From positions 278,608 to 342,607 of the IMG/VR virus record IMGVR_UViG_3300020469_003050: a stretch of 64,000 nucleotides of DNA. The stretch is one strand, 5' to 3'. The notes below the pieces were generated by a model that was not told the origin of the DNA, did no database searches, and was given only the letters and a program-made list of their open reading frames with translations. Positions within the stretch are counted from its first letter, which is position 1; the number at the start of each line of letters is the position of its first letter. The position numbers and the translations under genes were made by a program. Below are positions 1-51,531 of the stretch, one piece after another.

Positions 1-118
1 ACACGACCACTTAATGGGTATAACATTTGATAAGAGAGCAAAGACAAGTCAATTAAGTAGAGCATTAGCAATACGTAAAGAGAAACTAAAAAGAATTAAA
101 AAGAGAAGTAAAGATTAA
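1..118 (+). CDS. def: Peptide deformylase, 3' end (gene begins before the window)
   Basis: Frame 2 reads HDHLMGITFDKRAKTSQLSRALAIRKEKLKRIKKRSKD*, matching the PDF HExDHLxG..F.DR motif and basic C-terminal helix; stop overlaps ATG at 118. Confidence 0.65.
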   Translation, partial: HDHLMGITFDKRAKTSQLSRALAIRKEKLKRIKKRSKD

Positions 119-1044
119 TGGACTATTCCAACTATACATTACTAACCGTAGGGTGTAGTTTTACTTTTGGACAAGGCGCAGTTCCGCATTTCGATAAAAG
201 TAAGTCAACTCCTGAGAATAATGAAGCTAGAGATAGATGGCGTAAAGAATGTAACTTACTTTCTTATAGTCAAAGAGTTAAAGAAATAGTAAAATTTAAA
301 AAAGTTGTTAACTTGGGTACACCTGCAGGAAGTAATGAACTTGCTTTACTCAATATGAATACTTGGTTGGATAAAAATAAAGGTGAAAATGTTTTTGTAT
401 TATTCAGTTTAGCTGATCCACAAAGAGAAATGTTCTTTACTAAGAATAAAATTAGTAGACAACCAGATGCTTATGGATTAGAAGTATTCAATGTAAATCA
501 CACACAAGGTTTACATCCTAACGTAATAGAAGGTTTCTATACATATATTAATACTGACCTTAATATGACATTTAAGAACTGGATATTTAGAAAACAACTA
601 AGTTCAATATTGAGTTATAGAAATTTACCGAACTTAGTATTTCATGCTTATGACCCAATGGATATTAGAATTACTAAATTAAGAAAAATATTTAAATTAA
701 CTGAAGGTACTACGCATTGGCATGATTTAGATATTATATCAGACTTTATACAATGGATGGAAACAATAGAAGATGAACCTACATTTGAAAATTATATAAG
801 CATTAACAAAATTAAAGAGTGGGCCCTATCAGAAGACTGGTCTAAAGACCTAAAAAATATAATAAAAATAGAAGATTACTTACAAGCATATTGTAAAAGA
901 AACAAAAGACACCTCTTTGCACACAAAACACAGTACGGTAACAGAGGAGAAGCATATTCACCTTTCGATAATGCTCATTATAATAAACAAGCACATGTGA
1001 TTTTAGGTGACAAATTGTCGCAAGAAATACACAAAATCAGTTAA
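118..1044 (+). CDS. SGNH/GDSL-hydrolase-like phage protein
   Basis: GCSFTFG block I, NLGTPAGSN block II, C-terminal DNAHY (DxxH). Confidence 0.55.
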   Translation: MDYSNYTLLTVGCSFTFGQGAVPHFDKSKSTPENNEARDRWRKECNLLSYSQRVKEIVKFKKVVNLGTPAGSNELALLNMNTWLDKNKGENVFVLFSLADPQREMFFTKNKISRQPDAYGLEVFNVNHTQGLHPNVIEGFYTYINTDLNMTFKNWIFRKQLSSILSYRNLPNLVFHAYDPMDIRITKLRKIFKLTEGTTHWHDLDIISDFIQWMETIEDEPTFENYISINKIKEWALSEDWSKDLKNIIKIEDYLQAYCKRNKRHLFAHKTQYGNRGEAYSPFDNAHYNKQAHVILGDKLSQEIHKIS

Positions 1045-1101
1045 AAATCAACTAAATACAATAGGGTATTATGATATACCCGCAAAACAAAGGAGATTAA
1101 T

Positions 1102-1263
1102 ATGATGAAATGGATAAAAGATAGAACCAAAGAAAGAACATCATGGGATGGTGCAGTTTGTATAGCACTAGGTCTTATGATTTTATTCATGGCACCTCTG
1201 GCAAAAATAGCGGCAGGCCTTGCTATTGCATGGGGCGTTTGGACAATCTGGAAATCAGAGTAA
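1102..1263 (+). CDS. Small 2-TM membrane protein (53 aa, holin-like)
   Basis: Not in ORF track; AAGGAG RBS; MMKWIKDRTKERTSWDGAVCIALGLMILFMAPLAKIAAGLAIAWGVWTIWKSE. Confidence 0.65.
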   Translation: MMKWIKDRTKERTSWDGAVCIALGLMILFMAPLAKIAAGLAIAWGVWTIWKSE

Positions 1264-1280
1264 GATTGTGAATTTTCTGT

Positions 1281-1499
1281 ATGACACCTGAATTCCGAAA
1301 AGAAGCATACCGTATGTTTTGGCTCGTAAAGGGCCATCTTGGGTGTCATACGTGGCCAGACGAAGACATTATCAAAATGCATGATAGTTATTTTGTAAGA
1401 AATTGGAGATCCGGATGCGACGGAGCGCCGCATTATGAGAGAGAAGAAGGATTTGAAGAAGCATACGAGGAAATAATTGGAACAGAAAATACCCCCTAG
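1281..1499 (+). CDS. Hypothetical protein
   Basis: ORF track, co-directional. Confidence 0.6.
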   Translation: MTPEFRKEAYRMFWLVKGHLGCHTWPDEDIIKMHDSYFVRNWRSGCDGAPHYEREEGFEEAYEEIIGTENTP

Positions 1500-1728
1500 A
1501 TTAATACTTTTGTCTGAGTTTTTAGACCAGAGCAAAAGAAAAGAAGATGAAATTCACTTTTATGAAAAGGAACTCAGAAAGATTGAAGAAAAACTATATT
1601 GGCTACGTAGAGAAAAAAATCTAACAGAAACGATTATCAATATAATCACTCAGGAAAAAGTTGTCGATATTAAAGAAGAAATGGAAAAGCGATACCTAGC
1701 AGAAAGAGAAACACAAGAAGATAAATAA
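1477..1728 (+). CDS. Hypothetical coiled-coil protein
   Basis: ORF track; heptad-rich. Confidence 0.6.
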   Translation: MEQKIPPRLILLSEFLDQSKRKEDEIHFYEKELRKIEEKLYWLRREKNLTETIINIITQEKVVDIKEEMEKRYLAERETQEDK

Positions 1729-1748
1729 AAAAGAAAAAAGGCGAAGTA

Positions 1749-2214: not shown

Positions 2215-2568
2215 ATGAAAACATCAATTATCGGACTGCTAGTCGCAGTCTTTTTTTCTGCAACGGCGTTTGCAGAAGACACAAGTGTATCAAATGATAT
2301 TTCTTGGTCTCTAACATTAGAGAGACAAACAGAAGCAAATGCTAATACAGGCGAACTAATGGGGACTATGGAAGTTTTAGGACTTGATGTTTCTGCGGGT
2401 GGACTGTGGAACATTGATAAATCAGGTGAAGATTTTATTGACTTGAATAAAACGATGTTAAATGTTAGCCACTCGCTTTCTGACCAAGCAAAAGTGTATC
2501 TAAAGAATGACTTTAGTACAGATTGGGACAGAACTGAGTCAACAATAGGTCTACAAATTACGTTTTAA
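2215..2568 (+). CDS. Secreted small beta-barrel outer-membrane-protein-like protein
   Basis: AAGGAGG RBS, signal peptide (MKTSIIGLLVAVFFSATAFA), alternating beta strands, C-terminal IGLQITF with terminal Phe. Confidence 0.55.
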   Translation: MKTSIIGLLVAVFFSATAFAEDTSVSNDISWSLTLERQTEANANTGELMGTMEVLGLDVSAGGLWNIDKSGEDFIDLNKTMLNVSHSLSDQAKVYLKNDFSTDWDRTESTIGLQITF

Positions 2569-2606
2569 TTTGTTGACAAAAACACCTCTATAGTGTATAA
2601 ATATAG

Positions 2607-2885
2607 ATGTTAACGTTGAAGCAAGTTCAACACTATACAGGACCTGGGGGCAGTACCCAGCAGGTCCACCATAAACACATTATCAGTTTGCATTAGTGTG
2701 TTTATGATGGGCCTGAACTAGGATCGACTGGTGGTTAATAGGCGAGTGGAGTTAACCGAGTGACTTCGTTATTGGTCAAACACTATAATTGCAAACGACA
2801 ATTATCAGCCAGAAATGGCAATGGCGGCCTAATTTAGGCACGTAGGGGTTGGTGACTTGCCTGGCAACAGAAAAGTCACATTTTT
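2607..2885 (+). ncRNA. ssrA: Circularly permuted (two-piece) tmRNA, tag ANDNYQPEMAMAA
   Basis: T-arm plus CAGGTCC-ACCA (2661-2671) lies upstream of GGGCCTG (2709-2715), forming an acceptor stem with G3.U70; hairpin intervening segment 2672-2708; tag ORF 2791-2832; promoter TTGACA(2573)-17-TATAAA. Outer boundaries approximate. Confidence 0.93.
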
Positions 2886-2908
2886 ATTTGGGAGTGGGTT
2901 TTTTGTAA

Positions 2909-3247
2909 ATGGCATACGTAGTAACGCAAGATTGTATAAAATGTAAGTATACTGATTGTGTGGAAGTTTGTCCCGTTGATTGCTTTTATGAGGGCAAAGA
3001 TACTTTAGTTATTAACCCAGATGAATGTATAGATTGCGGTGTTTGTGAACCCGAATGTCCTGCAGAAGCAATAATTCCTGATACGCATGAAAAATTTACA
3101 ATGCGACTCTACGATATAAATAAAAAGTGGTCAGAACAATGGCCAGTAATTACAGAAAAGCAAGATCCCTTACCTGATGCTGATTCACTAAATCCAGCAA
3201 TGGGATATTCAGAAGATAAGACAAAGTTGTTAGATGAATACGATTGA
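2909..3247 (+). CDS. fdxA: 7Fe/8Fe ferredoxin (FdxA family)
   Basis: [18 protein letters not shown] and [16 protein letters not shown] motifs. Confidence 0.93.
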
Positions 3248-4927: not shown

Positions 4928-5475
4928 TAATGACTAAAAAAGATTATGGTTATCCTGTTTGGGTAGTTGAAGAAGTATTTGAAACTAATGTGGCAGATGA
5001 TGTATTAAGACAATCAAAAGATTTACCATTTGTTCCAATGGAAGGCAAGAGAACAGATAAAACAGGTAAAAGAAATTGGATGAATCAATATAAAGGCAAA
5101 GAATGGAATTCATTTGAAGAAGTATGTTTATTGTTTGATAGTAAATATATGAAAAAAAAGTTTAGTGACGTTTGTGAAAAAGACTTTACTAACTTAGGTA
5201 CAAGAATAGAATTATGCAAAGATGCAAAAGGAAGTTGGTTGCACAATCACTTTGACGATAAAGCAAAGTTATTTACTTTACAGATTTACTTAACAGACAC
5301 AGATACAAGTACAAGTTTTATGAAGAAAGATACTCCTGCAAGAAAAAATACAGGTTGGTTCTTTGCAAATACAGGAACTGAACTTCATGGACTAAGTGCT
5401 TTGACACAAAATAGAATAAGCATCATTGTTAACTATTGTGATGAATCATGGAGAGATAGGTCTGTAATTGTATGA
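4924..5475 (+). CDS. 2OG-Fe(II) oxygenase superfamily protein
   Basis: HxD (HFDD), distal H (ELHG) and RxS (NRISI). Confidence 0.7.
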   Translation: MIMTKKDYGYPVWVVEEVFETNVADDVLRQSKDLPFVPMEGKRTDKTGKRNWMNQYKGKEWNSFEEVCLLFDSKYMKKKFSDVCEKDFTNLGTRIELCKDAKGSWLHNHFDDKAKLFTLQIYLTDTDTSTSFMKKDTPARKNTGWFFANTGTELHGLSALTQNRISIIVNYCDESWRDRSVIV

Positions 5476-6194
5476 GATATAAAAATAGTAATCAAAGAAC
5501 TAAAGACTATCTAGCTAGATTTGACAAAAATAAAGTTTTACAAAACTTGGTAGGTACGGATACGCCTGTAATTTTAGATATTGGTGCTAACATTGGTCAA
5601 ACTGTAGAAAAGTTAAAGATTATATGGGAGAATGCAGTAATACATTCTATAGAGCCTTTACCAGAAGCATATCAGGAACTATACTTAACGAAGGGCATAA
5701 TGTCAGATGTATATGTGTATAATCATGCTCTAGGCTCAGTAAATGGTTGGCAAGAGTTTAATGTCAATAAACATCAACCTATGCTTAGTGGTTTCTATAA
5801 GCTAAATGAGAATAGCAAAGATAGTATTGCTATCAATAAACCCGAAAAGGCACATAAGAACTTCTTAGAATCTGAACCCACACAGATACCTGTTATGACA
5901 TTAGATACGTTTACAAAGCAACATAACATAGAAAATATAGACATAATTAAGATGGACGTTCAAGGTGCTGAGCCTGAAATACTAGAACATGGTATTGAAA
6001 CATTAAAAAATACACGAATCGTTCTTACCGAACTATCACTATATGATTTGTACGAAAAGCAGTGTAGTTTCTATGATATAGAAAAAACGTTGATTCCCTT
6101 GGGTTTTGAATTATATGATGTTGCTCATGTCAGCAAAAATCCAATGAATGGTCGTACAGATTGGGTTGATTTAATTTATTTGAAAAAAAGTTAA
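5472..6194 (+). CDS. FkbM-family SAM methyltransferase
   Basis: LDIGANIG, SIEP, IKMDVQGAE motifs. Confidence 0.9.
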   Translation: MRYKNSNQRTKDYLARFDKNKVLQNLVGTDTPVILDIGANIGQTVEKLKIIWENAVIHSIEPLPEAYQELYLTKGIMSDVYVYNHALGSVNGWQEFNVNKHQPMLSGFYKLNENSKDSIAINKPEKAHKNFLESEPTQIPVMTLDTFTKQHNIENIDIIKMDVQGAEPEILEHGIETLKNTRIVLTELSLYDLYEKQCSFYDIEKTLIPLGFELYDVAHVSKNPMNGRTDWVDLIYLKKS

Positions 6195-6238: not shown

Positions 6239-6455
6239 ATAAGCATAAAACAATTTAGCGGTTGTTTTATTGTAGTGCAAGGAAGAGGCTGTTACCAGAC
6301 GGTCGAACTTGACTAGTTAGGGGTGGTACCCAGGCTTAAAGCTGAGAGGCTAAGAGTCACATCGTTCTACCGAACGGAACTAGGTTCCCTGGATTCAGAA
6401 TGGTATCTGTGTCGAGGGGTTGGGGGTGTAACCAAGTCCCTCCTACTTTGCTTAT
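6239..6455 (+). ncRNA. Putative structured ncRNA (about 215 nt; possibly manA-motif-like)
   Basis: GC-rich ORF-free island after a promoter; ends pair (ATAAGCA/TGCTTAT); several internal hairpins. Confidence 0.65.
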
Positions 6456-12571: not shown

Positions 12572-13846
12572 TTGGCTGACAAAAAAGATTATCATTGTTC
12601 ATTTTGTGGGAAACATAAGAATGAAATTAGTACATTAATTGCAGGTCCTTCGACATTTATCTGTAATGAATGTATTGACCTATGTCACTCTATCGTATAT
12701 GAACGCAAGAATGTAACTAAAAAATCTAAAACTGTAAACAGTGACATTCCGACACCTGACGAAATTAATGAGTTTTTGAATGCTCATGTAATTGGTCAGG
12801 GAGAAGCTAAAGAAGTCCTGAGTGTGGCTGTTTACAATCATTATAAAAGAATTAATCAATCAGAAGATGATGATGTAGAGTTAGAGAAATCTAATGTTAT
12901 GATGCTCGGTCCTTCTGGTACAGGTAAAACACTCTTAGCAAAAACAATCGCAAAATTCTTAGATGTTCCTTTCGCACAAGTCGATGCAACTACATTAACA
13001 GAAAGTGGTTATGTAGGTGAAGATGTTGAAAACGTAATACAACGTTTACTTATGAATGCAGACTTTGAAATTAAGAAAGCAGAACAGGGTATTATCTACA
13101 TAGATGAGATAGATAAGAAAGCTAAAAAGGGTGAAAGTATTTCAATCACTAAAGATGTTAGTGGTGAAGGTGTTCAACAAGCCTTATTAAAAATTGTTGA
13201 AGGCACTGTTGTTCGTGTTCCGCCAGGTGGTGGGAGAAAACATCCAGGTGCTGATATGCTTGAAGTTAATACTGATAACATTTTATTCATTGTAGGTGGT
13301 GCATTTGTAGGACTTGATAAAGTAATCAAACGAAGATTGAATTCAAATGGTTCAATTGGTTTTGGTGCAAGAGTTATGGCACAAGATAGCAGTGATGATA
13401 TGACAGTATCACAAGAAGTGTTGCCAGAAGACGTAATTAAATATGGTATCATTCCAGAATTTATGGGTCGTTTTCCAATACTTGTAGGCATAGACGATTT
13501 AACTGAACGTGAGTTAAGTCGTATATTAACAGAACCTAAGAATAATTTAACTGCACAATTTAAGAAGATTTTTAAATTAGATGGTGTAGATTTAAATTTT
13601 ACTGAGGATGCAATAACAGAGATATCTAAAATAGCAAAAAAGAATAAGACTGGAGCAAGAGGTCTAAGAAGTGTTTTAGAAAAGTCATTGTTAAAATTAC
13701 AATTCAAATTACCTAAGCTATCAAAGAATGCTGGCTTAACGTCTGTTGAAATAACTGGTGACTTTATTAATAAAAATGCTGATCCAATTTTGGTATTTAA
13801 GGATGAAACAGAGGAAAATATAAACATTAATGAAAAGAAACTTTAA
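12572..13846 (+). CDS. clpX: ATP-dependent Clp protease ATPase ClpX
   Basis: CSFCGK/CNEC zinc finger, GPSGTGKT, GYVG, RKH, IGF loop; TTG start. Confidence 0.97.
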   Translation: MADKKDYHCSFCGKHKNEISTLIAGPSTFICNECIDLCHSIVYERKNVTKKSKTVNSDIPTPDEINEFLNAHVIGQGEAKEVLSVAVYNHYKRINQSEDDDVELEKSNVMMLGPSGTGKTLLAKTIAKFLDVPFAQVDATTLTESGYVGEDVENVIQRLLMNADFEIKKAEQGIIYIDEIDKKAKKGESISITKDVSGEGVQQALLKIVEGTVVRVPPGGGRKHPGADMLEVNTDNILFIVGGAFVGLDKVIKRRLNSNGSIGFGARVMAQDSSDDMTVSQEVLPEDVIKYGIIPEFMGRFPILVGIDDLTERELSRILTEPKNNLTAQFKKIFKLDGVDLNFTEDAITEISKIAKKNKTGARGLRSVLEKSLLKLQFKLPKLSKNAGLTSVEITGDFINKNADPILVFKDETEENININEKKL

Positions 13847-14375
13847 AGATGAAAGAGGGCGAAAGCCTTTTATTATCGCTAACCAACGTATCCGTGCAGA
13901 CGAGTTACGTGTGGTAACAGACCAAGGTGAGCAACTTGGTATCATGCAAAAAAATCAAGCACAACAAAAAGCGGATGCTGACGGATTAGATTTAGTTCTT
14001 ATAGTTCCTAACGCCAATCCTCCTGTAGCAAAAATCATTAGTATAAATAAGTACAACTACGAAATCAAAAAACGTGAGAAAGAGAAGGCAAAACTAGCCA
14101 GACAAAATTCAGTTGAAGTTAAAGAAGTTAAGTTCAGACCAGCTATAGGCGAGAATGACCTAAAGATGAAACTTAACCAAGTTCAAAAGTTTATTGACAA
14201 AGGCAATAAAGTAAAAGTGACAATACAAATGAGGGGCAGGGAAAATGCAAAAGCTACAGAAGTTTTAGCATATTTCAATTCCCAAATCTCTGAATACTTG
14301 AGTAGTTTTAAGTATGACCTTCCTCTAAAAACTAACGGGAATAGAATAATAGGTGTAATAATAAAAAATGACTAG
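13830..14375 (+). CDS. infC: Translation initiation factor IF-3
   Basis: NQRIRADELRV, LDLV...PPVAKI, KEVKFRP, KVKVTIQMRGRE. Confidence 0.95.
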   Translation: MKRNFKDERGRKPFIIANQRIRADELRVVTDQGEQLGIMQKNQAQQKADADGLDLVLIVPNANPPVAKIISINKYNYEIKKREKEKAKLARQNSVEVKEVKFRPAIGENDLKMKLNQVQKFIDKGNKVKVTIQMRGRENAKATEVLAYFNSQISEYLSSFKYDLPLKTNGNRIIGVIIKND

Positions 14376-14634
14376 TTACAATAATAGTTATAGAAACAAA
14401 AATAATAGAAATGATTTTTCACAAACAGGTAAATCAGGTCTAACAGTAGAAGTAAGAAACGGGCAGTTTGAAAGAGCATTAAGAAAGTTCAAAAAGAAAG
14501 TGCAAGAAGCAGGTATCATACAGGAAGTACGAGACAGAAAGGCTTATGTTAAACCAAGTGAAGTTAAACGTAAGGCTAGGGACGCCGGAAAAAAACGTTG
14601 GTACAGAAAAATGAAAATGCAGGAACTAGAATAA
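14368..14634 (+). CDS. rpsU: Ribosomal protein bS21
   Basis: VEVRNGQFERALRKFKKKV...YVKPS. Confidence 0.92.
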   Translation: MTSYNNSYRNKNNRNDFSQTGKSGLTVEVRNGQFERALRKFKKKVQEAGIIQEVRDRKAYVKPSEVKRKARDAGKKRWYRKMKMQELE

Positions 14635-15432: not shown

Positions 15433-15876
15433 ATGACAAACGGACTATCTATTTTTAACCAGTTACGACCTGTAACTGTAGGCTTTGACAACATGTTTGA
15501 CCACTTTGAACGTATGTTCGATGGCGATGTTGCAACATTTCAAACTCAAGTAAACTTCCCACCTTACAATATCGTAAAGACTGGAGATTTCACTTATGAT
15601 GTAGAACTAGCATTAGCTGGATTCTCAAAAGATGATATTACAGTTGACTATGCTGATAACATTTTGACGGTTAAATCTGTTAAGAAAGAAAAATCAGATG
15701 ATGATAAAGACGGTGTTCTTCACAGAGGTATCTCTAAAAGAATGTTCTCTAAAGCATTCACTATTGCAGATGATGTTGAAGTGAAAGGTGCAGAGTTGAA
15801 AGACGGGTTACTGAAAATATCTTTAGAACGTATCGTTCCAGAAGGTAAGAAGCCTCGTAATATCGAAATATCATAA
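15433..15876 (+). CDS. Small heat-shock protein Hsp20 (IbpA-like)
   Basis: FPPYNI, LALAGF, LHRGIS.R.F, AELKDGLLKI. Confidence 0.95.
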   Translation: MTNGLSIFNQLRPVTVGFDNMFDHFERMFDGDVATFQTQVNFPPYNIVKTGDFTYDVELALAGFSKDDITVDYADNILTVKSVKKEKSDDDKDGVLHRGISKRMFSKAFTIADDVEVKGAELKDGLLKISLERIVPEGKKPRNIEIS

Positions 15877-15999: not shown

Positions 16000-16314
16000 A
16001 TGCACGTACAAAACGATAGTGAAACAGTAGTTGATGCATCTACTAGGACTTCAATAGAACCTCCTAAGAGATATTATATTGTTATGCATAATGATGATTC
16101 AACTCCTATAGATTTTGTAGTAAAGGTGTTAATCGAACTGTATAAACACGAAGACCAAACGGCGGCTGACCTAGCAAATAAAATTCACATAGATGAAAAA
16201 GCTATTGTCGGCATGTTCAATTTAGAAATAGCAGAACAGAAGGTGGAAGAGACTCACGGAACAAGTAGGGCGCATGGTTACCCATTAACGGTAACATTAG
16301 AACAAGCAGATTAA
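16000..16314 (+). CDS. clpS: Clp protease adaptor ClpS
   Basis: PPKRYYIVMHNDDSTPIDFV, IH, AEQKV, GYPL. Confidence 0.92.
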   Translation: MHVQNDSETVVDASTRTSIEPPKRYYIVMHNDDSTPIDFVVKVLIELYKHEDQTAADLANKIHIDEKAIVGMFNLEIAEQKVEETHGTSRAHGYPLTVTLEQAD

Positions 16315-41539: not shown

Positions 41540-41550
41540 AAAGGTACACT

Positions 41551-41781
41551 ATGGAGTTTAATGAAGGAATATTCAAAACATTAAAAGAATTAGCATTAAA
41601 AAGCGATTCATTAACACTTGCATTGATTTATACTTGCGGTCATGTCATTATTGCGATGTCAGTTGTTTCAATAATGACAAATGCATCTTTATGGGAAGCA
41701 GGCGCAGTAGCACTTATTGAACCAGCTATTAATGGTGTTTGGTTTTATGTGTTGCACAAACTTTGGAAAAAGTTTGCATGA
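41551..41781 (+). CDS. DUF2061-like small membrane protein (second copy)
   Basis: YT.GH...ALIEP.INGVWFYVLH. Confidence 0.7.
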   Translation: MEFNEGIFKTLKELALKSDSLTLALIYTCGHVIIAMSVVSIMTNASLWEAGAVALIEPAINGVWFYVLHKLWKKFA

Positions 41782-42900: not shown

Positions 42901-43058
42901 TGAAAATACTCTTAGTTGTGATGATATTATTAGTCAGTGCTTGTGCCACACCTAAGACAGAAAAAGAAAAGAAGGACAGAACAACATTACAAGTAATTAA
43001 AATTATAGGATGTGTTGTTGCTCCTCATATACCAGTATGTATAACACCAGGTAAGTAA
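42900..43058 (+). CDS. Small lipoprotein (52 aa)
   Basis: MKILLVVMILLVSAC lipobox; TAATG overlap. Confidence 0.55.
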   Translation: MKILLVVMILLVSACATPKTEKEKKDRTTLQVIKIIGCVVAPHIPVCITPGK

Positions 43059-43059
43059 G

Positions 43060-46675: not shown

Positions 46676-49522
46676 ATGAAGTGTTATCCACATAATGATT
46701 ATTATAGATCCGATGAATTAGAAATTGTTCCAAAACTTCTAATTGCATCTAAGGCATCTAGTGAAGTCCTTCGGTCAGTAATGGCTGAGGCAGAAACCAT
46801 TCAATCTAAACTTACCGATGAACATTATTTGACTCATATAATGAAGTCATATGATATGAGTGCTCCTGAGGGCATGGCACTTATGACTCTTTGTGAATCT
46901 CTTTTACGTACACCAGACAAAGAAACACAAGACAAACTTATCAAAGATAAATTATCAAATGCAGAATGGTATAAATTATCTAATAATAGTTTTTATTCTA
47001 AAGCGGCCAGTATTGCATTAACTCAGGCACAAATGCTTTCAGCATATGAAGGTATAGTAGGAAGAATAGGCTGGCCAGCAGTAAGAGAAATGACAAAGAC
47101 TATGGTAAAACAAATGGGTACTTTATTTGTTATGGGTAGCAACATAGAAACTGCAATAAAAAATAAGAAAAAAGGTTATGCATATTCATTTGATATGCTA
47201 GGAGAGGCCGCAACAAATTGGGAAGATGCAAATTTATACTATGAAAGATATTTAGATGCGGCTATTAAGTCAAAAGAATCCATATCTATAAAACTTAGTG
47301 CAATACACCCTAGATACGAATTAAAGAACCACAAAGACGTTTTACACACACTAGTACCTAAATTAGCCGCTATAGCTAGAGTATGCGAAGAAAACAACAC
47401 TACAATGTTTATTGATGCAGAAGAGGCACGTAGGCTCGATATAAGCATTATGATACTTGAAGAAATGCTTAAAACATACAAATTTAAAGATTTTACTATA
47501 GGATTTGCTCTACAGGCTTATCAGAAACGTGCTTTTTGGGTTATTGATACGTTAGAGACAATAGCAGAGCATAGTAGCGCCAAACTCGTTATACGGCTTG
47601 TTAAAGGCGCATATTGGGACACTGAGATAAAGTATTCACAACAAGAAGGACTAGATTATCCAGTATTTACAAGAAAAGAGAATACAGACATATCTTATCT
47701 AGCATGTACTAAAAAACTGATGCATAGTGAAAGATTGAAAACTGCATATGCTACACATAATCCATATACAGTTTCAGCAATACAATGTGTTGGTAAATGT
47801 AGTAAGCAAGAATATGAATTTCAGAAACTTTACGGAATGGGTGATAGTTTATTCAGTCAGATAGTAGGAGATACGAAAGTCAGAGTATATGCACCAGTCG
47901 GTGAGTATAAAGATTTATTAGCATATCTAATAAGACGTTTATTAGAGAATGGTGCTAACACTAGTTTTGTTCATACAAATGAAGTTGTAGATCCTTTTAA
48001 AGAAGTTAAAAAGAAAAAGAAATCACTTAAGTCATGGAAAGATTTATATCCTGGAAGAAAGAATAGTAAAGGATATGATTTAACTGATCCAGCTATGGTT
48101 GATTATATGTTAGACTCTGCGGTTCACCCTCACCATGATGAAGAATTACTTTCAGTGGAAGATAGTATAGAACATTTATACAACTATCAAAATCAATGGG
48201 CAAATACAACATTTGAACATAGAAAGAAAATTCTACTAGCATGTGCAGATAGTTTAGAAGAAGAAATGATTCCTGCGGCAAACAGATTAGTAAAATATTC
48301 TTTTAAAACATATCCAAATGCAGTTGCAGAAATTAGAGAGTCAGTTGATTTTATTCGTTACTACGTAGAACAAGCTGAATTAATGTATGGAGAAAATATC
48401 AAAATAGGTTATACCGGTGAATATAATTCTACAGTTTTTAATCCTAGAGGAACTTGGATGGTAATAGCACCTTGGAATTTTCCTTATGCAATTTTCTTAG
48501 GACCAATCGTAGCCGCATTGATTACAGGAAATACCGTATTGGCAAAACCCGCACCACAGACCCTAGAAATTGCAAAAGTTGTATTGGGTGCAATGCATCA
48601 CGTTGGTGTACCAATAGATGCACTACGTATGTGTGACCCTGATATTGAAGAGGCTTCTAAAGCAATCAAAGATGAACGTATATCAGGTATAACGTTCACA
48701 GGCTCTCATAAGAGTGCTAAGACTATACAGAGGCTTATTGCTGAACGTGATGGGCCTATTATACCTTTCATTGCAGAAACAGGTGGTATAAATTCTATGA
48801 TTGCAGATTCTACTTGTTTACCTGAACAGTTAGTCGAAGATGTATCATATGGTGCATTCGATAGTGCAGGACAAAGATGTTCAGCAACTAGATTTTTATT
48901 TCTTCAAAAAGAAAATAGTGAAGAAATTATTAATATGTTAAAACATAAAATTAAAGTAATATCACTTGGTAATGCAGATGATTTAAATACAGACGTATCA
49001 CGTGTTATTGATGGTGTGGCATATGCAAAGATACAAGAAAGAATTGCAGTACTTGAAGAAAACGAAACATTAATTGCAACGAAATCTCGTAATGGAAAAG
49101 AGTTACCAAAATTAATTATCCCACCAAGTGCTTATCTTGTAACAGACTACAAAAAGTATTTTGATGAAGAAATATTTGGCCCATTGTTGCATGTTTATGT
49201 TTATGAAAAAGATGAATTAGATGAAATAGTATCTTTTATAAATGAAAGTAAATTTGGACTAACATTAAGTATACATTCACGTGTAACTAAGTTCTATGAT
49301 AACATAGCTAAGAAAATGAAGATAGGTAACATTTATATAAACAGAGACCAAATAGGTGCAGTTGTAGAGACTCAACCATTCGGTGGATACGGTTTAAGTG
49401 GTACTGGACCTAAAGCAGGTGGTCCTAATTATCTAACTCCTTATGTGTGGGAGAAACACATAAGCATCAACACTTCTGCTATCGGCGGAGACACTTTGTT
49501 ATTGACTTCTGAACCTCGATAG
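46676..49522 (+). CDS. putA: Bifunctional proline dehydrogenase / P5C dehydrogenase
   Basis: SFDMLGEAA, SIKLS, RLVKGAYWD, ATHN, RRLLENGAN, PWNFP, ETGG, FDSAGQRCSA, PFGG.GLSGTGPKAGG. Confidence 0.96.
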   Translation: MKCYPHNDYYRSDELEIVPKLLIASKASSEVLRSVMAEAETIQSKLTDEHYLTHIMKSYDMSAPEGMALMTLCESLLRTPDKETQDKLIKDKLSNAEWYKLSNNSFYSKAASIALTQAQMLSAYEGIVGRIGWPAVREMTKTMVKQMGTLFVMGSNIETAIKNKKKGYAYSFDMLGEAATNWEDANLYYERYLDAAIKSKESISIKLSAIHPRYELKNHKDVLHTLVPKLAAIARVCEENNTTMFIDAEEARRLDISIMILEEMLKTYKFKDFTIGFALQAYQKRAFWVIDTLETIAEHSSAKLVIRLVKGAYWDTEIKYSQQEGLDYPVFTRKENTDISYLACTKKLMHSERLKTAYATHNPYTVSAIQCVGKCSKQEYEFQKLYGMGDSLFSQIVGDTKVRVYAPVGEYKDLLAYLIRRLLENGANTSFVHTNEVVDPFKEVKKKKKSLKSWKDLYPGRKNSKGYDLTDPAMVDYMLDSAVHPHHDEELLSVEDSIEHLYNYQNQWANTTFEHRKKILLACADSLEEEMIPAANRLVKYSFKTYPNAVAEIRESVDFIRYYVEQAELMYGENIKIGYTGEYNSTVFNPRGTWMVIAPWNFPYAIFLGPIVAALITGNTVLAKPAPQTLEIAKVVLGAMHHVGVPIDALRMCDPDIEEASKAIKDERISGITFTGSHKSAKTIQRLIAERDGPIIPFIAETGGINSMIADSTCLPEQLVEDVSYGAFDSAGQRCSATRFLFLQKENSEEIINMLKHKIKVISLGNADDLNTDVSRVIDGVAYAKIQERIAVLEENETLIATKSRNGKELPKLIIPPSAYLVTDYKKYFDEEIFGPLLHVYVYEKDELDEIVSFINESKFGLTLSIHSRVTKFYDNIAKKMKIGNIYINRDQIGAVVETQPFGGYGLSGTGPKAGGPNYLTPYVWEKHISINTSAIGGDTLLLTSEPR

Positions 49523-49562
49523 TATATAATAATACTACTAGTACTAGAAGAAGGAATAACAA

Positions 49563-50084
49563 ATGAGCGATAAATTACACATATCTTGGGATAGATATGA
49601 AGAAGAAATCGAAAAATTAGCTATAATGGTTCACGAAGATGGATACAAATTCAATCAAGTAGTTTGTATTGCAAAAGGTGGATTAAGAGTAGGAGATATT
49701 TTTGCTAGATTATTTGATGTACCATTAGCAATAATGTCAGTAGAATCATATCATGGTGATGAAGTAAAGGATCAAAGAGGACAAATTATCTTTGGAAATT
49801 CTCTTGCTAAAACAACTCCTAACATAGGTAGCAAAATTTTATTAGTAGATGATTTAGCAGATTCTGGAACAACATTTGAGAAGTGTGTAGAATGGTTACA
49901 ATTCACAGAAGGTTTTTTCATTGAAGATATTAAAACTGCGACAATGTGGTTAAAAGGAAGTTCATCATATACACCAGACTATTTCGTAGAATATTTGGAA
50001 GACAACCCATGGATTGTTCAGCCAATGGAAAAATACGAAGAAATAAATATAGAACAACTTATAAAGAACAGGGAACAACAATGA
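49563..50084 (+). CDS. Xanthine/guanine-type phosphoribosyltransferase
   Basis: ISW, CIAKGGL, LLVDDLADSGTT, PDY, WIVQP. Confidence 0.8.
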   Translation: MSDKLHISWDRYEEEIEKLAIMVHEDGYKFNQVVCIAKGGLRVGDIFARLFDVPLAIMSVESYHGDEVKDQRGQIIFGNSLAKTTPNIGSKILLVDDLADSGTTFEKCVEWLQFTEGFFIEDIKTATMWLKGSSSYTPDYFVEYLEDNPWIVQPMEKYEEINIEQLIKNREQQ

Positions 50085-50494
50085 GTAAACAGGTAGACTT
50101 AAATAAATACAAAGAGTTTGTACAAGAGGTTACATCAAAGCAGTCAGGCAATACAGACGAACTAACTGCGACTCTTAAAAAACTTGATGAAGAAACAGGC
50201 GTCAATATGGCGTTGCTTATGACAGGTGCAATCGGCATTGCATCAGAGGGAGGCGAGTTCAGTGAGATTGTTAAGAAATGTGTATTTCAAGGTAAACCAC
50301 TTGATAATGAAACTATCTTTCATTGTAAACGAGAACTTGGTGATATTATGTGGTATTGGGTTAATTCTTGCCGTGCATTGGGTTTGGATCCTAATGACGT
50401 AATGGCAGAGAATGTTGAAAAACTAAAAGCAAGATATCCAGGCGGAGAGTTTGATGTTTACTATTCAGAAAATAGAAAAGAAGGAGATTTATAA
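50081..50494 (+). CDS. MazG-like NTP pyrophosphohydrolase
   Basis: EGGEFSEIVKK, RELGDIMWY, NVEKLKARYP. Confidence 0.9.
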   Translation: MSKQVDLNKYKEFVQEVTSKQSGNTDELTATLKKLDEETGVNMALLMTGAIGIASEGGEFSEIVKKCVFQGKPLDNETIFHCKRELGDIMWYWVNSCRALGLDPNDVMAENVEKLKARYPGGEFDVYYSENRKEGDL

Positions 50495-50594
50495 TGGACT
50501 TTTTATTATGGCATGGAATCGCAATGATTTCTGTAATAGCAGTAAGTTTCAGTGCAGGTTACTATACCGCGGTTAAACGCAAAAAAGGCGAGAT

Positions 50595-51080
50595 TTGATT
50601 GAAGATATTAAGAAGTGGATTGAGGATTTTGTGTCAGTACACAACGAACCTATTGGGCATGTGCCATGTCCTTTTGCGAAACAGGCAATGCTCAAAGAGA
50701 GAATCAACTATGTATCAGGAGGAAAGCATACTATATCACCTCTGCTTGATTCTCTCGCTGAGAACTGGGACGACAAATATGAAGTTGTAGTTCTCTACTG
50801 TCCTACGGAAGATTACACGCCAGAAGAACTTTCAAAAATTGTAAAAGATTTCAATGATGTTGCTATGAGTAAAGATATAGTAGCACTTGAGGATCATCCT
50901 AATGACCCTGAAATACTTAGTGGCGAAAAAATGAACTACGGTAAAGCTATATTAGTCTTAGTTCAGAGACTATCAAAATTAAATCAAGCAAGTAAAATAC
51001 TAAAGAAACAAGGGTATTATGATAAATGGCCTGATGAAAATTACGATGATGTTGTGAAATGGAGATTTGATAAGGAATAA
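50595..51080 (+). CDS. CPF-motif protein (DUF1415-like)
   Basis: WIEDFV...PCPFA, LEDHP. Confidence 0.55.
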   Translation: MIEDIKKWIEDFVSVHNEPIGHVPCPFAKQAMLKERINYVSGGKHTISPLLDSLAENWDDKYEVVVLYCPTEDYTPEELSKIVKDFNDVAMSKDIVALEDHPNDPEILSGEKMNYGKAILVLVQRLSKLNQASKILKKQGYYDKWPDENYDDVVKWRFDKE

Positions 51081-51105
51081 ATAGATGTAACTTAGGAGTT
51101 ACAAT

Positions 51106-51531
51106 ATGACAACTTATGCCCGAATAGACCTAGCACAAACTAATTATTCTGTTATACCAAATTGTAGATTTTTGAAAGAACCAAACATACCTGAACTTAA
51201 TGAAATCTATAAAACATATTGTAGACATAAAGGTTTTAAAAGTGTAATGCCAATGTTCGATAATGATTATTTGCAAAATGATATTATTGGATATTATGAT
51301 GAAGAAGATAAACTTGTTGCATTCAGTTGTATTATGATACAAGACCATGAAAGTGTTGAAGCATTGCAGTTTGCTTGGGATTACAAAACTCCTAAATTAC
51401 ATTTAGGTATAAAAAGTTTAAGAAATGAATGTGCAATATATAAAAGTAAAGGTTACAAATATTTGTATTTAGGCGAAGCACATAGTTATAAGAAACAGAT
51501 AAAAGGATTTGAGATACTAGGACCCATTTAA
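51106..51531 (+). CDS. Stand-alone ATE_C-like (aminoacyl-tRNA:protein transferase, GNAT fold)
   Basis: YKTYCRHK, KLVAFS, FAWDY...LG..SL..E, GYKYLYLG...YK..IKGFEIL follow the ATE/Bpt C-terminal domain pattern. Confidence 0.6.
   Translation: MTTYARIDLAQTNYSVIPNCRFLKEPNIPELNEIYKTYCRHKGFKSVMPMFDNDYLQNDIIGYYDEEDKLVAFSCIMIQDHESVEALQFAWDYKTPKLHLGIKSLRNECAIYKSKGYKYLYLGEAHSYKKQIKGFEILGPI

What the first reader, a model, noticed from the sequence alone, without database searches (positions are those of the whole stretch)
1..51531. Possible phage-encoded proteolysis-targeting toolkit: PDF, ATE/Bpt-like transferase, ClpS, tmRNA and ClpX
Seen: the end of peptide deformylase (1-118), tmRNA with an -AA tag, intact ClpX (GYVG, RKH, IGF), ClpS and an ATE_C-like transferase; no ClpP or ClpA in the window. 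Established: ssrA tags ending in AA are read by ClpX; Bpt/ATE-like enzymes add N-terminal Leu, which ClpS delivers to ClpAP. Inference: the phage supplies both writers and readers of C- and N-degrons while borrowing the host ClpP/ClpA, redirecting degradation for example toward defence or cell-cycle proteins. This is an alternative role for ORF 51106.
Basis: partly seen in the sequence, partly recalled or inferred. Interest (0 to 1): 0.65.

Follow-up and report, generated by a model that had tools for sequence, protein, structure and literature searches.

The report
Jumbo phage's complete Clp proteolysis kit
A 343-kb marine phage carries its own full Clp protease machinery, a ribosome-rescue tmRNA and translation helpers, as other giant phages do, but the supposed 'N-degron writer' gene belongs to a separate, uncharacterised arginine-chemistry operon.

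Summary
They are the peptide deformylase end (1-118), a full-length permuted alpha-type tmRNA (2560-2923, tag ANDNYQPEMAMAA), intact ClpX (12572-13846), ClpS (16000-16314) and an ATE_C-like ORF (51106-51531).

The window is the last 64 kb of a complete 342,607-bp virus record. Elsewhere that genome encodes ClpA, a true ClpP and a second ClpP-like protein. 'Borrowing host ClpP/ClpA' is therefore wrong. Only SmpB is missing.

ClpS sits in a conserved proteostasis island (ClpX-IF3-S21-Hsp20-ClpS). Distant relatives have ClpX-S21-Hsp20-ClpS or DnaK-Hsp20-ClpS.

The ATE_C-like protein is a 141-aa single GNAT lobe. It is homologous to the C-terminal half of Bpt/ATE1 and keeps the catalytic Tyr-Lys, but it lacks the ATE_N acceptor domain. 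Its aminoacyl pocket is Ate1-like (Ser/Glu), not Leu-type. It lies in a conserved operon with an AglA/YqcI-like protein, DUF6614 and an arginine amidinotransferase homologue. It also occurs in a near-complete relative without any Clp gene.

Verdict: a self-contained Clp plus tmRNA quality-control and translation-support kit, a known theme in jumbo phages. The N-degron 'writer' role is not supported.

The parts
1..118 (+). 3' end of the peptide deformylase gene (the whole ORF is genome 278183-278725, 180 aa)
   Evidence: PF01327 128.9 bits. TIGR00079 107.4 bits against cut-off 103.95. Motifs GIGLAAPQ, EGCLS and HEHDH are present.
2560..2923 (+). Permuted (two-piece) alpha-proteobacterial-type tmRNA gene. 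The tag reading frame is about 2791-2832 and encodes ANDNYQPEMAMAA plus stop.
   Evidence: Rfam RF01849 122.6 bits, model positions 1-355. RF04321 114.4 bits. ARAGORN calls tmRNA*. Relatives carry tags ANDNFAPSLALAA and ANDNFAPTGYALAA.
12572..13846 (+). ClpX unfoldase, 424 aa, TTG start
   Evidence: NF003745 571.6 bits (cut-off 359). zf-C4_ClpX plus AAA_2 domains. GYVG, RKH, IGF and Walker A/B motifs. RNA-library contigs match it exactly.
13830..14375 (+). Translation initiation factor IF3
   Evidence: IF3_N 87.5 bits and IF3_C 69.3 bits.
14368..14634 (+). Ribosomal protein S21
   Evidence: PF01165 55.3 bits. S21 holds the same position in relative G001.
15433..15876 (+). Small heat-shock protein (Hsp20), the conserved upstream neighbour of ClpS
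   Evidence: PF00011 63.3 bits. Hsp20-ClpS adjacency is also seen in G001 and G002.
16000..16314 (+). ClpS adaptor / N-recognin, 104 aa
   Evidence: PF02617 83 bits. It aligns without gaps to E. coli ClpS (2W9R, E 2e-16). N31, D32, D33, T35 and H63 are conserved, and Ile37 replaces Met40. A complex model with the phage ClpA N-domain scores 0.81 against a best control of 0.01.
50595..51080 (+). Conserved upstream ORF of the ATE_C-like operon (161 aa), distantly AglA/YqcI-YcgG-like
   Evidence: AF2 pLDDT 91.9. The best PDB match is AglA, Z 6.8, 147 aligned residues, with the next family at Z 4.6. Weak Pfam hits to DUF6875 (10 of 20 members), DUF1415 (3 of 20) and YqcI_YcgG (1 of 20). It lies upstream of the ATE_C-like gene in most related loci.
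51106..51531 (+). ATE_C-like single-lobe GNAT (141 aa), a probable aminoacyl-tRNA-dependent transferase of unknown acceptor
   Evidence: PF04377 29.3 bits. hhalign to canonical Bpt gives E 7.5e-5 with Tyr128-Lys129 aligned to the Bpt YK motif. AF2 pLDDT 92.4. Structural matches are the MprF aa-PG synthase C-terminal lobe at Z 14.8, FemX at Z 13.9 and ATE1 at Foldseek 2e-5. More than 544 viral loci carry it.
51531..51878 (+). DUF6614 protein (115 aa). Its start overlaps the ATE_C-like stop codon.
   Evidence: PF20319 81 bits. It is a mainly viral family. It lies next to or near the ATE_C-like gene in most loci.
51853..53091 (+). L-arginine:X amidinotransferase homologue (412 aa)
   Evidence: Profile A3 against PDB: AGAT E 1.2e-23, SxtG 1.6e-21, StrB1 1.9e-18, HsvA 1.6e-17. 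The HC(L/W)T active-site motif and the GGH.D motif are invariant.
55797..56120 (+). Cpn10/GroES-like co-chaperonin
   Evidence: PF00166 38 bits.
63034..63567 (+). tRNA-Leu(TAA), tRNA-Glu(TTC) and tRNA-Arg(TCT)
   Evidence: ARAGORN and Rfam. The genome has 10 tRNAs in all, including a second tRNA-Arg(ACG).

Best explanation
**What the record is.** The window is the last fifth of a complete, roughly 343-kb jumbo phage of marine Alphaproteobacteria. The phage carries a self-sufficient protein quality-control and translation-support kit. It is not a degron 'writer-reader' device that leans on host proteases.

**Shown.** The genome encodes:
- ClpX, ClpA and ClpP, plus a second ClpP-like protein, and ClpS, all with intact motifs;
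- a full-length alpha-type tmRNA;
- PDF, IF1, IF3, S21, Hsp20 and GroES.

ClpS lies in an island conserved across relatives whose ClpS is only 30-33% identical: ClpX or DnaK, then (S21), then Hsp20, then ClpS.

**Inferred mechanism.**
1. The phage tmRNA is charged by host AlaRS and delivered by host SmpB, because no phage SmpB exists.
2. It frees ribosomes stalled on damaged or truncated mRNAs during infection and adds ANDNYQPEMAMAA.
3. Phage ClpX reads the C-terminal Ala-Ala carboxylate and feeds the chain into phage ClpP.
4. Phage ClpS binds bulky hydrophobic N-termini, docks on the phage ClpA N-domain and hands substrates to ClpAP.
5. Hsp20 holds aggregating proteins.
6. The net effect is ribosome and amino-acid recycling and proteostasis over a long infection of a slow-growing, proteostasis-poor host.

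**The ATE_C-like ORF is a separate matter.** It is the transferase of a conserved four-gene operon: an AglA/YqcI-like protein, the ATE_C-like GNAT, DUF6614 and an arginine amidinotransferase homologue. This operon most likely performs aminoacyl-tRNA-dependent chemistry centred on arginine, possibly using Arg- or Lys-tRNA, on a non-protein or otherwise unknown acceptor.
For: **Genome and virus status.**
- 342,607 bp with a 93-bp terminal repeat; an IMG/VR virus record with a CheckV completeness estimate of 100%.
- A terminase-like ORF is present.

**Clp parts.**
- ClpA: 738 aa, TIGR02639 902 bits over its full length.
- ClpP: NF001368 305.6 bits (cut-off 249), with a Ser-His-Asp triad.
- A second ClpP-like protein.
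- ClpX: 571.6 bits.
- ClpS: 83 bits.
- The ClpS pocket and its ClpA-contact residues are conserved.
- The ClpS/ClpA-N complex model scores 0.81 against a best control of 0.01. That mark was reached by 51 of 78 solved complexes and 2 of 108 mismatched pairs. The runs agree on at least 85% of contacts and the partner pLDDT is at least 83. The interface includes ClpS residue 76.

**tmRNA.**
- Full-length, with conserved ANDN...(L/M)AA tags in relatives.
- SmpB is absent from all four near-complete genomes that carry a tmRNA.

**Island.** Its conservation is shown.

**Expression hint.** Contigs from three marine metatranscriptome runs (two studies) match ClpX, IF3, S21, Hsp20 and ClpS with no differences. 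The ORF just downstream is uncovered in them but is covered in a DNA run.

**ATE_C-like operon.**
- Synteny holds in at least 52 of 80 loci.
- Amidinotransferase homology: E 1e-23.
- AglA-like fold: Z 6.8.
- The ATE_C-like protein aligns to the C-terminal half of Bpt.
- There is no ATE_N and no Aat in the genome.
- Ser104 and Glu108 align with klAte1 Ser273 and Glu277 (PMC9351520).
- G005 has the operon but no Clp genes.

**Precedent.** Jumbo phages with ClpX/A/B/P/S (PMC6102473, PMC7824862). Huge phages with tmRNA, PDF, initiation factors and S21 (PMC7162821).
Against: - No experiment supports any of this. Every function is inferred from homology.
- ClpA (902 bits against cut-off 993) and ClpS (80 bits against cut-offs of 112-143) fall below NCBIfam equivalog cut-offs, so their specificities may differ from the textbook proteins.
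- The complex pass may reflect memory of solved ClpS-ClpA structures.
- RNA-library contigs can derive from contaminating DNA.
- A general housekeeping role does not exclude selective degradation of host proteins.
- The host is not identified. No genome carries the same tag, and the nearest cellular ClpX is at most 56% identical.
- The amino-acid donor and the acceptor of the ATE_C-like enzyme are unknown. The Ser/Glu pocket reading rests on weak alignments (hhalign probability 62%).
- One distant 260-aa ATE_C-like gene sits 3.5 kb from a divergent ClpS in another phage-like contig.
Confidence: 0.6

Rival explanations
1. The ATE_C-like enzyme is an N-degron writer that adds a destabilising residue to chosen host proteins. 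ClpS then delivers them to ClpAP, so the phage re-targets host proteolysis.
For: - The protein is a true, if distant, homologue of the Bpt/ATE1 catalytic lobe and keeps the Tyr-Lys motif.
- All three Clp-bearing complete genomes of the lineage have both genes.
- A 260-aa ATE_C-like gene lies 3.5 kb from a divergent ClpS in contig L112.
- Canonical Bpt was found in only 1 of 13 sampled alphaproteobacterial genomes of 1.4 Mb or less. A streamlined host might therefore lack its own Bpt.
Against: - There is no ATE_N domain, which is the acceptor N-terminus pocket in Ate1/Bpt (PMC9351520), anywhere in the genome.
- The pocket is Ser/Glu, not Leu-type. [quoted passage not shown]
- clpS is 35 kb away, and the two genes are 58 kb and at least 100 kb apart in G002 and G001.
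- The conserved neighbours are metabolic enzymes.
- G005 has the gene without any Clp gene.
- The 18 GenBank phage records with ClpS lack it.
- Four other long relatives have no ClpS nearby. One is coupled to glycosyltransferases.
Confidence: 0.08
2. The Clp proteins serve the phage's own life cycle rather than general proteostasis. Possible roles are capsid maturation by the ClpP-like protease, remodelling of replication or assembly complexes by ClpX/ClpA, or timed removal of early phage proteins.
For: - ClpP-related prohead proteases are common. The second ClpP-like protein also matches head-maturation models (62 bits).
- Lambda O and Mu complexes are ClpX substrates, as cited in PMC6102473.
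- Iyer et al. suggest ClpA/ClpX may act as assembly translocases (PMC7824862).
Against: - ClpP1 scores 305 bits on cellular ClpP models against 101 bits on the head-maturation model.
- ClpX and ClpS sit with Hsp20, S21 and IF3, or with DnaK in G002, not with structural genes.
- ClpX is absent from the complete relative G002, and every Clp gene is absent from G005. They are therefore not core morphogenesis genes.
Confidence: 0.15
3. The kit is a host-takeover or counter-defence weapon. Phage ClpS, ClpX and a phage-specific tmRNA tag change which proteins are degraded, for example defence or cell-cycle proteins, and out-compete host adaptors.
For: - Phage ClpS has Ile where E. coli has the gatekeeper Met40. 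From my own knowledge, Met40 substitutions broaden specificity.
- The ClpS, ClpX and ClpA sequences are old, divergent lineages: at most 56% identity to any cellular ClpX.
- The tag differs from any tag in 185,579 species genomes.
- Iyer et al. list ClpP and ClpS among proteins possibly deployed against the host.
Against: - No dedicated targeting adaptor (SspB-like) was found.
- No substrate is known.
- The pocket residues are otherwise canonical.
- The genomic company (sHsp, DnaK, ribosomal and initiation factors) points to maintenance rather than attack.
Confidence: 0.15

Closest known systems
Clp gene sets of cultured jumbo phages (Agrobacterium phage Atu_ph07, Sinorhizobium phage Phosso, PA5oct-like Pseudomonas phages)
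   Same: - Atu_ph07 encodes ClpX, ClpA, ClpB, ClpP and ClpS (PMC6102473).
- Its ClpX and Phosso's are among the best annotated phage matches, at about 53% identity.
- ClpS occurs in 18 GenBank phage records.
- Iyer et al. 2021 had already noted ClpP, ClpS, ClpA and ClpX in jumbo phages.
   Different: - This phage is an uncultured, low-GC (34%) marine phage.
- Its ClpS is only 29-37% identical to theirs.
- It adds an alpha-type tmRNA and a conserved Hsp20-ClpS island.
- Those cultured phages have no homologue of the ATE_C-like gene.
Translation and ribosome-rescue genes of huge phages (Al-Shayeb et al. 2020, PMC7162821)
   Same: tmRNA, PDF, initiation factors and S21 are reported there as recurrent cargo of phages over 200 kb.
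   Different: - That paper also reports SmpB in some phages. Here SmpB is missing from all four tmRNA-bearing near-complete genomes.
- Clp proteins are not discussed in that paper.
Bacterial ClpAPS Leu/N-degron pathway and ClpXP-ssrA pathway (E. coli, Caulobacter)
   Same: - The same components and motifs are present.
- ClpS aligns to E. coli ClpS without gaps.
- The tag begins ANDN and ends in Ala-Ala, as alphaproteobacterial tags do.
   Different: - The components are virus-encoded.
- No Aat, canonical Bpt, SspB or SmpB is present.
- The ClpS gatekeeper residue is Ile instead of Met.
Bpt / ATE1 aminoacyl-tRNA-protein transferases
   Same: - It is homologous to the ATE_C GNAT lobe.
- The catalytic Tyr-Lys is kept, together with the Trp equivalent to klAte1 Trp260.
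- Ser and Glu stand at the klAte1 Ser273 and Glu277 positions.
   Different: - 141 aa against about 240 aa (Bpt) or about 500 aa (ATE1).
- No ATE_N domain.
- ATE_C scores 29 bits, against 98-149 bits in alphaproteobacterial Bpt.
- NCBIfam arginyltransferase scores 23.5 bits against a cut-off of 252.
Other aminoacyl-tRNA-dependent GNAT transferases with non-protein acceptors (MprF aa-PG synthases, FemX, Sba18/Sbb17 peptide synthases)
   Same: - These are the best structural matches. MprF C-terminal lobe: Z 14.8, rmsd 2.3, 136 aligned. FemX: Z 13.9. Sbb17: Z 12.4.
- Like them, the phage protein's gene neighbours are metabolic.
   Different: - Those enzymes are double-GNAT proteins. The phage protein is one lobe only.
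- There is no sequence-level match to them.
Arginine-modifying natural-product enzymes: AGAT/SxtG/StrB1/HsvA amidinotransferases and AglA (YqcI/YcgG haem arginine N-hydroxylase, PMC12866846)
   Same: - The 412-aa neighbour matches amidinotransferases at E 1e-23 to 1e-17 with active-site motifs conserved.
- The 161-aa neighbour's only standout structural match is AglA.
   Different: - Both are very divergent. Single-sequence Pfam scans miss the amidinotransferase, and the AglA match is only Z 6.8.
- No product is known.
- The operon is viral.

Membership tests
ClpX (NF003745 / TIGR00382) | Score above the equivalog cut-off over the full length | tested here: met
   571.6 bits against cut-off 359, residues 4-415 of 424.
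ClpX (NF003745 / TIGR00382) | N-terminal C4 zinc finger, Walker A/B, GYVG pore loop, RKH loop and IGF ClpP-docking loop | tested here: met
   zf-C4_ClpX 56 bits. The motifs were read in the translation.
ClpS (PF02617) | Domain score above the curated cut-off | tested here: met
   Pfam 83 bits against 23. NCBIfam equivalog cut-offs (112-143) are not reached, at 80 bits.
ClpS (PF02617) | N-degron pocket residues (E. coli Asn34, Asp35, Asp36, Thr38, Met40, His66; numbering from my own knowledge) | tested here: met
   In the ungapped alignment to 2W9R, N31, D32, D33, T35 and H63 are conserved, and Met40 is replaced by Ile37. Relatives keep N, D, T and H.
ClpS (PF02617) | Binds the ClpA N-domain | tested here: inconclusive
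   The complex model scores 0.81 against a best control of 0.01. The interface is centred on ClpS residue 76, the position of E. coli Glu79. This is a prediction, and it may reflect memory of solved complexes.
ClpA (TIGR02639) | Two AAA+ modules, an N-domain, a ClpP-docking loop and an equivalog score | tested here: inconclusive
   902 bits over model positions 4-733, but the cut-off is 993. Both Walker A/B pairs, GYVG and IGF are present. The gene lies outside the window (genome 14634-16850).
ClpP (NF001368 / TIGR00493) | Family score and the Ser-His-Asp triad | tested here: met
   305.6 bits against 249. The TIGR00493 equivalog scores 288.9 against 308.6 and is not reached. The triad motifs GQACSMG, MIHQP and ERDKF are present. 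The gene lies outside the window (genome 167039-167635).
tmRNA, permuted alpha type (RF01849) | Full-length covariance-model match with a tag reading frame | tested here: met
   122.6 bits against 50, model positions 1-355. The tag is ANDNYQPEMAMAA followed by a stop.
tmRNA-SmpB ribosome-rescue system | A cognate SmpB encoded alongside | tested here: not met
   No PF01668 match in G000, G001, G002 or G005. The control genomes did match. Host SmpB must be used (inference).
Bpt / ATE1 aminoacyl-tRNA-protein transferase | ATE_N domain (the acceptor N-terminus pocket) | tested here: not met
   No PF04376 match in six frames of the whole genome at E up to 10. The upstream ORF has a different fold. 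Longer relatives also lack ATE_N.
Bpt / ATE1 aminoacyl-tRNA-protein transferase | ATE_C domain at family-typical score and protein length | tested here: not met
   29.3 bits over 73 of 122 model positions in a 141-aa protein. Alphaproteobacterial Bpt scores 98-149 bits over positions 1-121 in proteins of about 240 aa. NCBIfam arginyltransferase scores 23.5 against 252.
Bpt / ATE1 aminoacyl-tRNA-protein transferase | Catalytic Tyr-Lys (klAte1 Tyr303-Lys304, FemX Lys305) | tested here: met
   Tyr128 and Lys129 are invariant in 50 homologues and align to the invariant YK of Bpt. Residue roles are taken from PMC9351520.
   The phage protein has Ser/Thr104 and invariant Glu108, where klAte1 has Ser273 and Glu277 and Bpt has Leu/Ile/Met/Ser and His/Gln/Leu. 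The other two pocket positions (Ala86, Leu120) are Bpt-like.
Bpt / ATE1 aminoacyl-tRNA-protein transferase | Transfers an amino acid from aminoacyl-tRNA to a protein N-terminus | not testable with these tools
   This needs an enzyme assay.
Amidinotransferase (AGAT / StrB1 / SxtG / HsvA) | Profile homology and the catalytic Cys-His-Asp motifs | tested here: met
   E 1.2e-23 to 1.6e-17 against four solved amidinotransferases. GGH.D and HC.T.D are invariant in 13 homologues. A single-sequence Pfam scan finds nothing.
Peptide deformylase (TIGR00079) | Equivalog score and the three metal/active-site motifs | tested here: met
   107.4 bits against 103.95. All three motifs are present.

The most novel reading that the evidence does not exclude
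The 141-aa ATE_C-like protein may be the first example of a minimal, single-lobe aminoacyl-tRNA transferase. It would use a basic aminoacyl-tRNA (Arg or Lys; the phage carries two tRNA-Arg genes). Together with the AglA-like protein, DUF6614 and the amidinotransferase, it would either build a previously unknown arginine-derived metabolite or arginylate a macromolecule (protein, nucleic acid or envelope component) during infection. The operon is carried by hundreds of marine and freshwater phage contigs. A protein-arginylating version would bring ATE1-type chemistry into phage-bacterium conflicts.
Probability: 0.2. Interest if true: 0.75.

Novelty: new member of a known kind. Interest (0 to 1): 0.4.

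Why it matters
**What it shows.** A widespread marine jumbo phage lineage carries both bacterial Clp proteolysis routes (ClpXP and ClpAPS) and a tmRNA. Its main remaining dependency in these pathways is host SmpB. The genes are seen in many marine metagenomes and in metatranscriptome libraries.

**Why that is useful.** It fits the picture that giant phages rebuild host proteostasis and translation rather than merely exploit them. It also offers concrete reagents:
- a divergent ClpS with an Ile gatekeeper residue;
- a new ssrA tag;
- a conserved Hsp20-ClpS island.

**The correction.** The finding corrects a tempting over-reading, because the ATE_C-like gene is not a degron writer for ClpS.

**A better question.** Its conserved operon, with an amidinotransferase and an AglA-like protein, is an uncharacterised and abundant viral gene set. 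Heterologous expression could test what it does.

Tried and rejected
1. **Host identification by tag.** A degenerate DNA pattern for the exact tag peptide found no match in 185,579 species genomes.
2. **Host or donor identification by ClpX.** The best cellular relatives are only 50-56% identical and are scattered over Eremiobacterota, Firmicutes and uncultured Alphaproteobacteria. No donor can be named.
3. **The upstream 161-aa ORF as a stand-in for ATE_N or as the missing first GNAT lobe.** Rejected. It has no ATE_N signal, and its confident model is neither a GNAT nor ATE_N-like. Only AglA stands out. The profile search against PDB sequences gave noise.
4. **Protein P0005 (ATE_C plus DUF6614 in one 214-aa product) as a Rosetta-stone fusion.** Its end reads like a frameshifted read-through of two overlapping genes. 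I gave it no weight.
5. **Genome-level co-occurrence from fragments.** Thirteen ClpS-bearing viral contigs of 57-219 kb had no ATE_C-like gene. They are 16-62% complete and that call included no positive control, so it says only that the genes are not closely linked.
6. **ClpS alignment A4.** It was too divergent for a pattern scan, so I used the three-sequence alignment A5 instead.
7. **PHROGs scan of ten large ORFs for hallmark genes.** It returned only metabolic families: halogenase, carbamoyltransferase and radical SAM. A terminase C-domain match was then found at 23 bits, cut-off 22.6.
8. **DUF6614 profile against PDB.** No meaningful match.
9. **Searches for MAP, SspB, Aat and SmpB in the genome.** All negative, with positive controls.
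10. **Contexts of longer (225-268 aa) ATE_C-like relatives.** One lies near a divergent ClpS. Four do not. I treat the one case as probably coincidental.

Full report
**Where the window lies.** The 64-kb window is bases 278,608-342,607 of a single 342,607-bp contig. The tools identify the contig as an IMG/VR virus record with direct terminal repeats and a CheckV completeness estimate of 100%. I found an exact 93-bp terminal repeat. GC content is about 34% and nearly all genes are on the + strand. A terminase-type nuclease domain is present at genome 224 kb, at 23 bits against a cut-off of 22.6. The record is therefore a complete, or circularly closed, jumbo phage genome. The question of what the phage 'borrows' can be answered from the whole genome.

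**Checking the observation.** All five items are real.
- The deformylase ORF (180 aa) ends at window base 118 and passes the TIGR00079 equivalog cut-off with its three motifs.
- The tmRNA matches the alpha-proteobacterial permuted model end to end, at 122.6 bits against a gathering score of 50. It encodes ANDNYQPEMAMAA.
- ClpX (12572-13846) scores 571.6 bits against a cut-off of 359. It has the zinc finger, Walker motifs, GYVG, RKH and IGF.
- ClpS is ORF 16000-16314, at 83 bits.
- ORF 51106-51531 matches ATE_C just over threshold, at 29.3 bits against 25.
- No ClpP or ClpA gene lies inside the window.

Whole-genome searches find more Clp parts and some absences.
- A full-length ClpA of 738 aa lies at genome 14,634-16,850. 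It scores 902 bits on TIGR02639 over its whole length, has both AAA modules, GYVG and an IGF loop, but falls below the 993-bit equivalog cut-off.
- A canonical ClpP lies at genome 167,039-167,635. It scores 305.6 bits against 249 and has a Ser-His-Asp triad.
- A second ClpP-like protein lies at genome 251,669-252,310. It has a proline-rich N-terminus and an apparently intact triad.
- Because the genome is terminally redundant, ClpA and an IF1 gene (genome 13,201-13,386) lie only about 14 kb beyond the window's end.
- SmpB, SspB, Aat (Leu_Phe_trans), ATE_N and methionine aminopeptidase are absent. Positive controls matched in known genomes.

The inference that the phage leans on host ClpP and ClpA is therefore wrong. 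The dependency left is SmpB, which is also missing from three near-complete relatives that all carry an alpha-type tmRNA.

**ClpS and its company.**
- Phage ClpS aligns without gaps to E. coli ClpS (E 2e-16).
- It keeps the Asn-Asp-Asp-x-Thr and His residues that hold an N-terminal residue. It also keeps the Glu and Lys that contact ClpA. The E. coli numbering comes from my own knowledge. The E. coli 'gatekeeper' Met40 is Ile here.
- A complex model of phage ClpS with residues 1-150 of phage ClpA scored 0.81, with a best control of 0.01. That mark was reached by 51 of 78 solved complexes and 2 of 108 mismatched pairs. The runs agree on at least 85% of contacts and the partner pLDDT is at least 83. 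The interface is centred on ClpS residue 76. Because ClpS-ClpA complexes are solved, this shows likeness rather than proof.
- In the window ClpS closes a tight, co-oriented cluster: ClpX, IF3, S21, Hsp20, ClpS.
- Two complete relatives have ClpS only 30-33% identical to ours. In them the island is ClpX-S21-Hsp20-ClpS (G001) and DnaK-Hsp20-ClpS (G002).
- ClpS therefore travels with chaperones and an unfoldase, which is the signature of a protein quality-control module.
- Contigs from three marine metatranscriptome runs (two studies) match ClpX, IF3, S21, Hsp20 and ClpS exactly. They leave the next ORF uncovered, although a DNA run covers it. This suggests expression but does not prove it.

**The ATE_C-like ORF.** It belongs to a compact family.
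- There are 561 word-search hits, nearly all 140-160 aa.
- There are at least 544 loci in IMG/VR.
- Only 189 representatives turn up among 1.84 billion proteins.
- The family is mostly viral.

Its AlphaFold model is confident (pLDDT 92.4) and shows a single GNAT lobe. The best matches are the C-terminal lobes of aminoacyl-tRNA-dependent transferases and of N-myristoyltransferase:
- MprF aminoacyl-phosphatidylglycerol synthase, Z 14.8;
- N-myristoyltransferase, Z 14.4;
- FemX, Z 13.9;
- Sbb17, Z 12.4;
- ATE1, Foldseek 2e-5.

By sequence the only PDB relative is Ate1. I fetched canonical Bpt genes from Alphaproteobacteria. They were found in 38 of 61 genomes at 98-149 bits. That tally includes one unpublished genome, G074, and no sequence from it was used. 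A profile-profile comparison then aligned phage residues 58-139 to the C-terminal half of Bpt (E 7.5e-5, probability 62%).

Residue roles below come from the klAte1 structure paper (PMC9351520).
- The family's invariant Tyr128-Lys129 coincide with the catalytic Tyr-Lys.
- Trp91 coincides with Trp260.
- Ser/Thr104 and invariant Glu108 coincide with Ser273 and Glu277 of the arginine pocket. Bpt has hydrophobic and His/Gln residues at those positions.
- The other two pocket positions (Ala86, Leu120) are Bpt-like.
- The same paper places the pocket for the acceptor's acidic N-terminus in ATE_N. This protein lacks that domain, and so do its 225-268-aa relatives.

It is thus a plausible aminoacyl-tRNA-dependent transferase, perhaps for a basic amino acid. 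It is not a Bpt, and nothing suggests that it adds Leu to proteins.

**Its neighbours.** In related loci the gene sits in a tightly packed, often overlapping operon.
- A 161-175-aa ORF lies upstream and DUF6614 downstream. A 356-412-aa ORF lies on either side of DUF6614.
- The order upstream ORF, ATE_C-like gene, DUF6614 holds in at least 52 of 80 loci.
- A profile of the 412-aa protein matches L-arginine:glycine amidinotransferase, SxtG, StrB1 and HsvA at E 1e-23 to 1e-17. Its Cys, His and Asp motifs are invariant.
- The upstream protein folds confidently (pLDDT 91.9). Its only standout structural match is AglA, the YqcI/YcgG haem enzyme that hydroxylates free arginine. The match is Z 6.8 over 147 residues, with the next family at Z 4.6. 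It comes with weak Pfam hints to DUF6875, DUF1415 and YqcI_YcgG (PMC12866846). I treat this as a lead only.
- DUF6614 has no known relative.

Three of the four genes therefore point to arginine or guanidino chemistry. A longer ATE_C-like relative in a TARA contig is coupled to glycosyltransferases. This also points to non-protein acceptors for this viral branch.

**Distribution.**
- The complete relatives G001 (343 kb) and G002 (329 kb) carry the ATE_C-like gene, ClpS, ClpA, ClpP and tmRNA. G002 lacks ClpX.
- G005 (158 kb, CheckV 98%) carries the ATE_C-like gene with DUF6614 and a tmRNA, but no ClpS, ClpA, ClpP or ClpX.
- clpS and the ATE_C-like gene are 35 kb apart here, about 58 kb apart in G002 and at least 100 kb apart in G001.
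- Among 50,697 GenBank phage records, 18 have ClpS and none has a homologue of the ATE_C-like protein.
- One distant 260-aa ATE_C-like gene lies 3.5 kb from a divergent ClpS in another phage-like contig. Four other such relatives have no ClpS nearby.
The caveat is that only four near-complete genomes of the lineage were available.

**Comparison with what is known.**
- Agrobacterium phage Atu_ph07 was described with ClpX, ClpA, ClpB, ClpP and ClpS (PMC6102473).
- Iyer et al. noted ClpP, ClpS (proposed to feed host ClpAP), ClpA and ClpX in jumbo phages (PMC7824862).
- Al-Shayeb et al. reported tmRNA, SmpB, PDF, initiation factors and S21 in huge phages (PMC7162821).
- This genome is therefore a new member of a known kind: an uncultured marine, alpha-tmRNA-bearing lineage with both Clp routes and a conserved Hsp20-ClpS island.
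- The part that seems new is the ATE_C-like/amidinotransferase operon. I found no description of it. Amidinotransferase genes alone have been noted in cyanomyoviruses (PMC12801897).

**Limits.** Every function is inferred from homology, models and context. No alternative genetic code was needed or used.

Noticed in passing
window 6254-6452 (+): A manA RNA motif (Rfam RF01745) scores 59.8 bits, just over its gathering score of 55.2. It lies between an FkbM-type methyltransferase gene (5472-6194) and a minus-strand ORF.
   Followed up: no
window 46676-49522 (+): A full-length bifunctional PutA (DNA-binding domain, proline dehydrogenase and P5C dehydrogenase; 948 aa) is encoded by the phage. This is an unusual auxiliary metabolic gene.
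   Followed up: no
window 18981-20489, 23204-23917, 37370-44780: The window carries a dense load of cell-like housekeeping genes. They include a TctA transporter subunit, a PNP/MTAP-type phosphorylase, holo-ACP synthase, GreA, IMPDH/GMP reductase, SufE, a cytidylyltransferase and an NAD-binding oxidoreductase. Further ones are UvdE (31806-32831), a radical SAM enzyme (24357-25799) and a class-3 lipase (25850-26860).
   Followed up: no
window 54364-54918 (+): A 184-aa ORF matches only part of the DNA polymerase III alpha NTPase domain (positions 25-94 of 260). It may be a fragment or a piece of a split gene.
   Followed up: no
window 2909-3247 (+): A 2x[4Fe-4S] ferredoxin gene starts inside the 3' end of the tmRNA as ARAGORN draws it (2577-2923). 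Rfam ends the tmRNA at 2882.
   Followed up: no
L301 (G002:C1:100000-106000), ORF 252-2168: In the complete relative G002, a full-length DnaK (Hsp70, 830 bits) occupies the place upstream of Hsp20-ClpS that ClpX holds in this genome and in G001. G002 has no ClpX.
   Followed up: partly
genome 251669-252310 (L003:1381-2022), outside the window: A second ClpP-like protein (213 aa) has a proline-rich N-terminal extension and an apparently intact triad. It lies next to a ribose-phosphate diphosphokinase gene. G001 has two ClpP genes 2 kb apart. It could be a ClpP2-type partner or a head protease.
   Followed up: partly
L112:1178-1465 (-) and L112:5001-5783 (+): A phage-like contig from another assembly carries a divergent ClpS-like gene that lacks the Asn-Asp-Asp-x-Thr pocket pattern. 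It lies 3.5 kb from a 260-aa ATE_C-like gene.
   Followed up: partly
61 alphaproteobacterial genomes sampled: Canonical Bpt (ATE_C at 98-149 bits) was found in 37 of 48 genomes larger than 1.4 Mb but in only 1 of 13 genomes of 1.4 Mb or less. Genome completeness is not given, and the tally includes the unpublished genome G074.
   Followed up: no
L302:6926-9329: A 268-aa ATE_C-like relative in a marine contig overlaps the start of two glycosyltransferase genes (GT10-like, GT25). It lies near an epimerase, a SET-domain gene and a ribonucleotide reductase small subunit.
   Followed up: no
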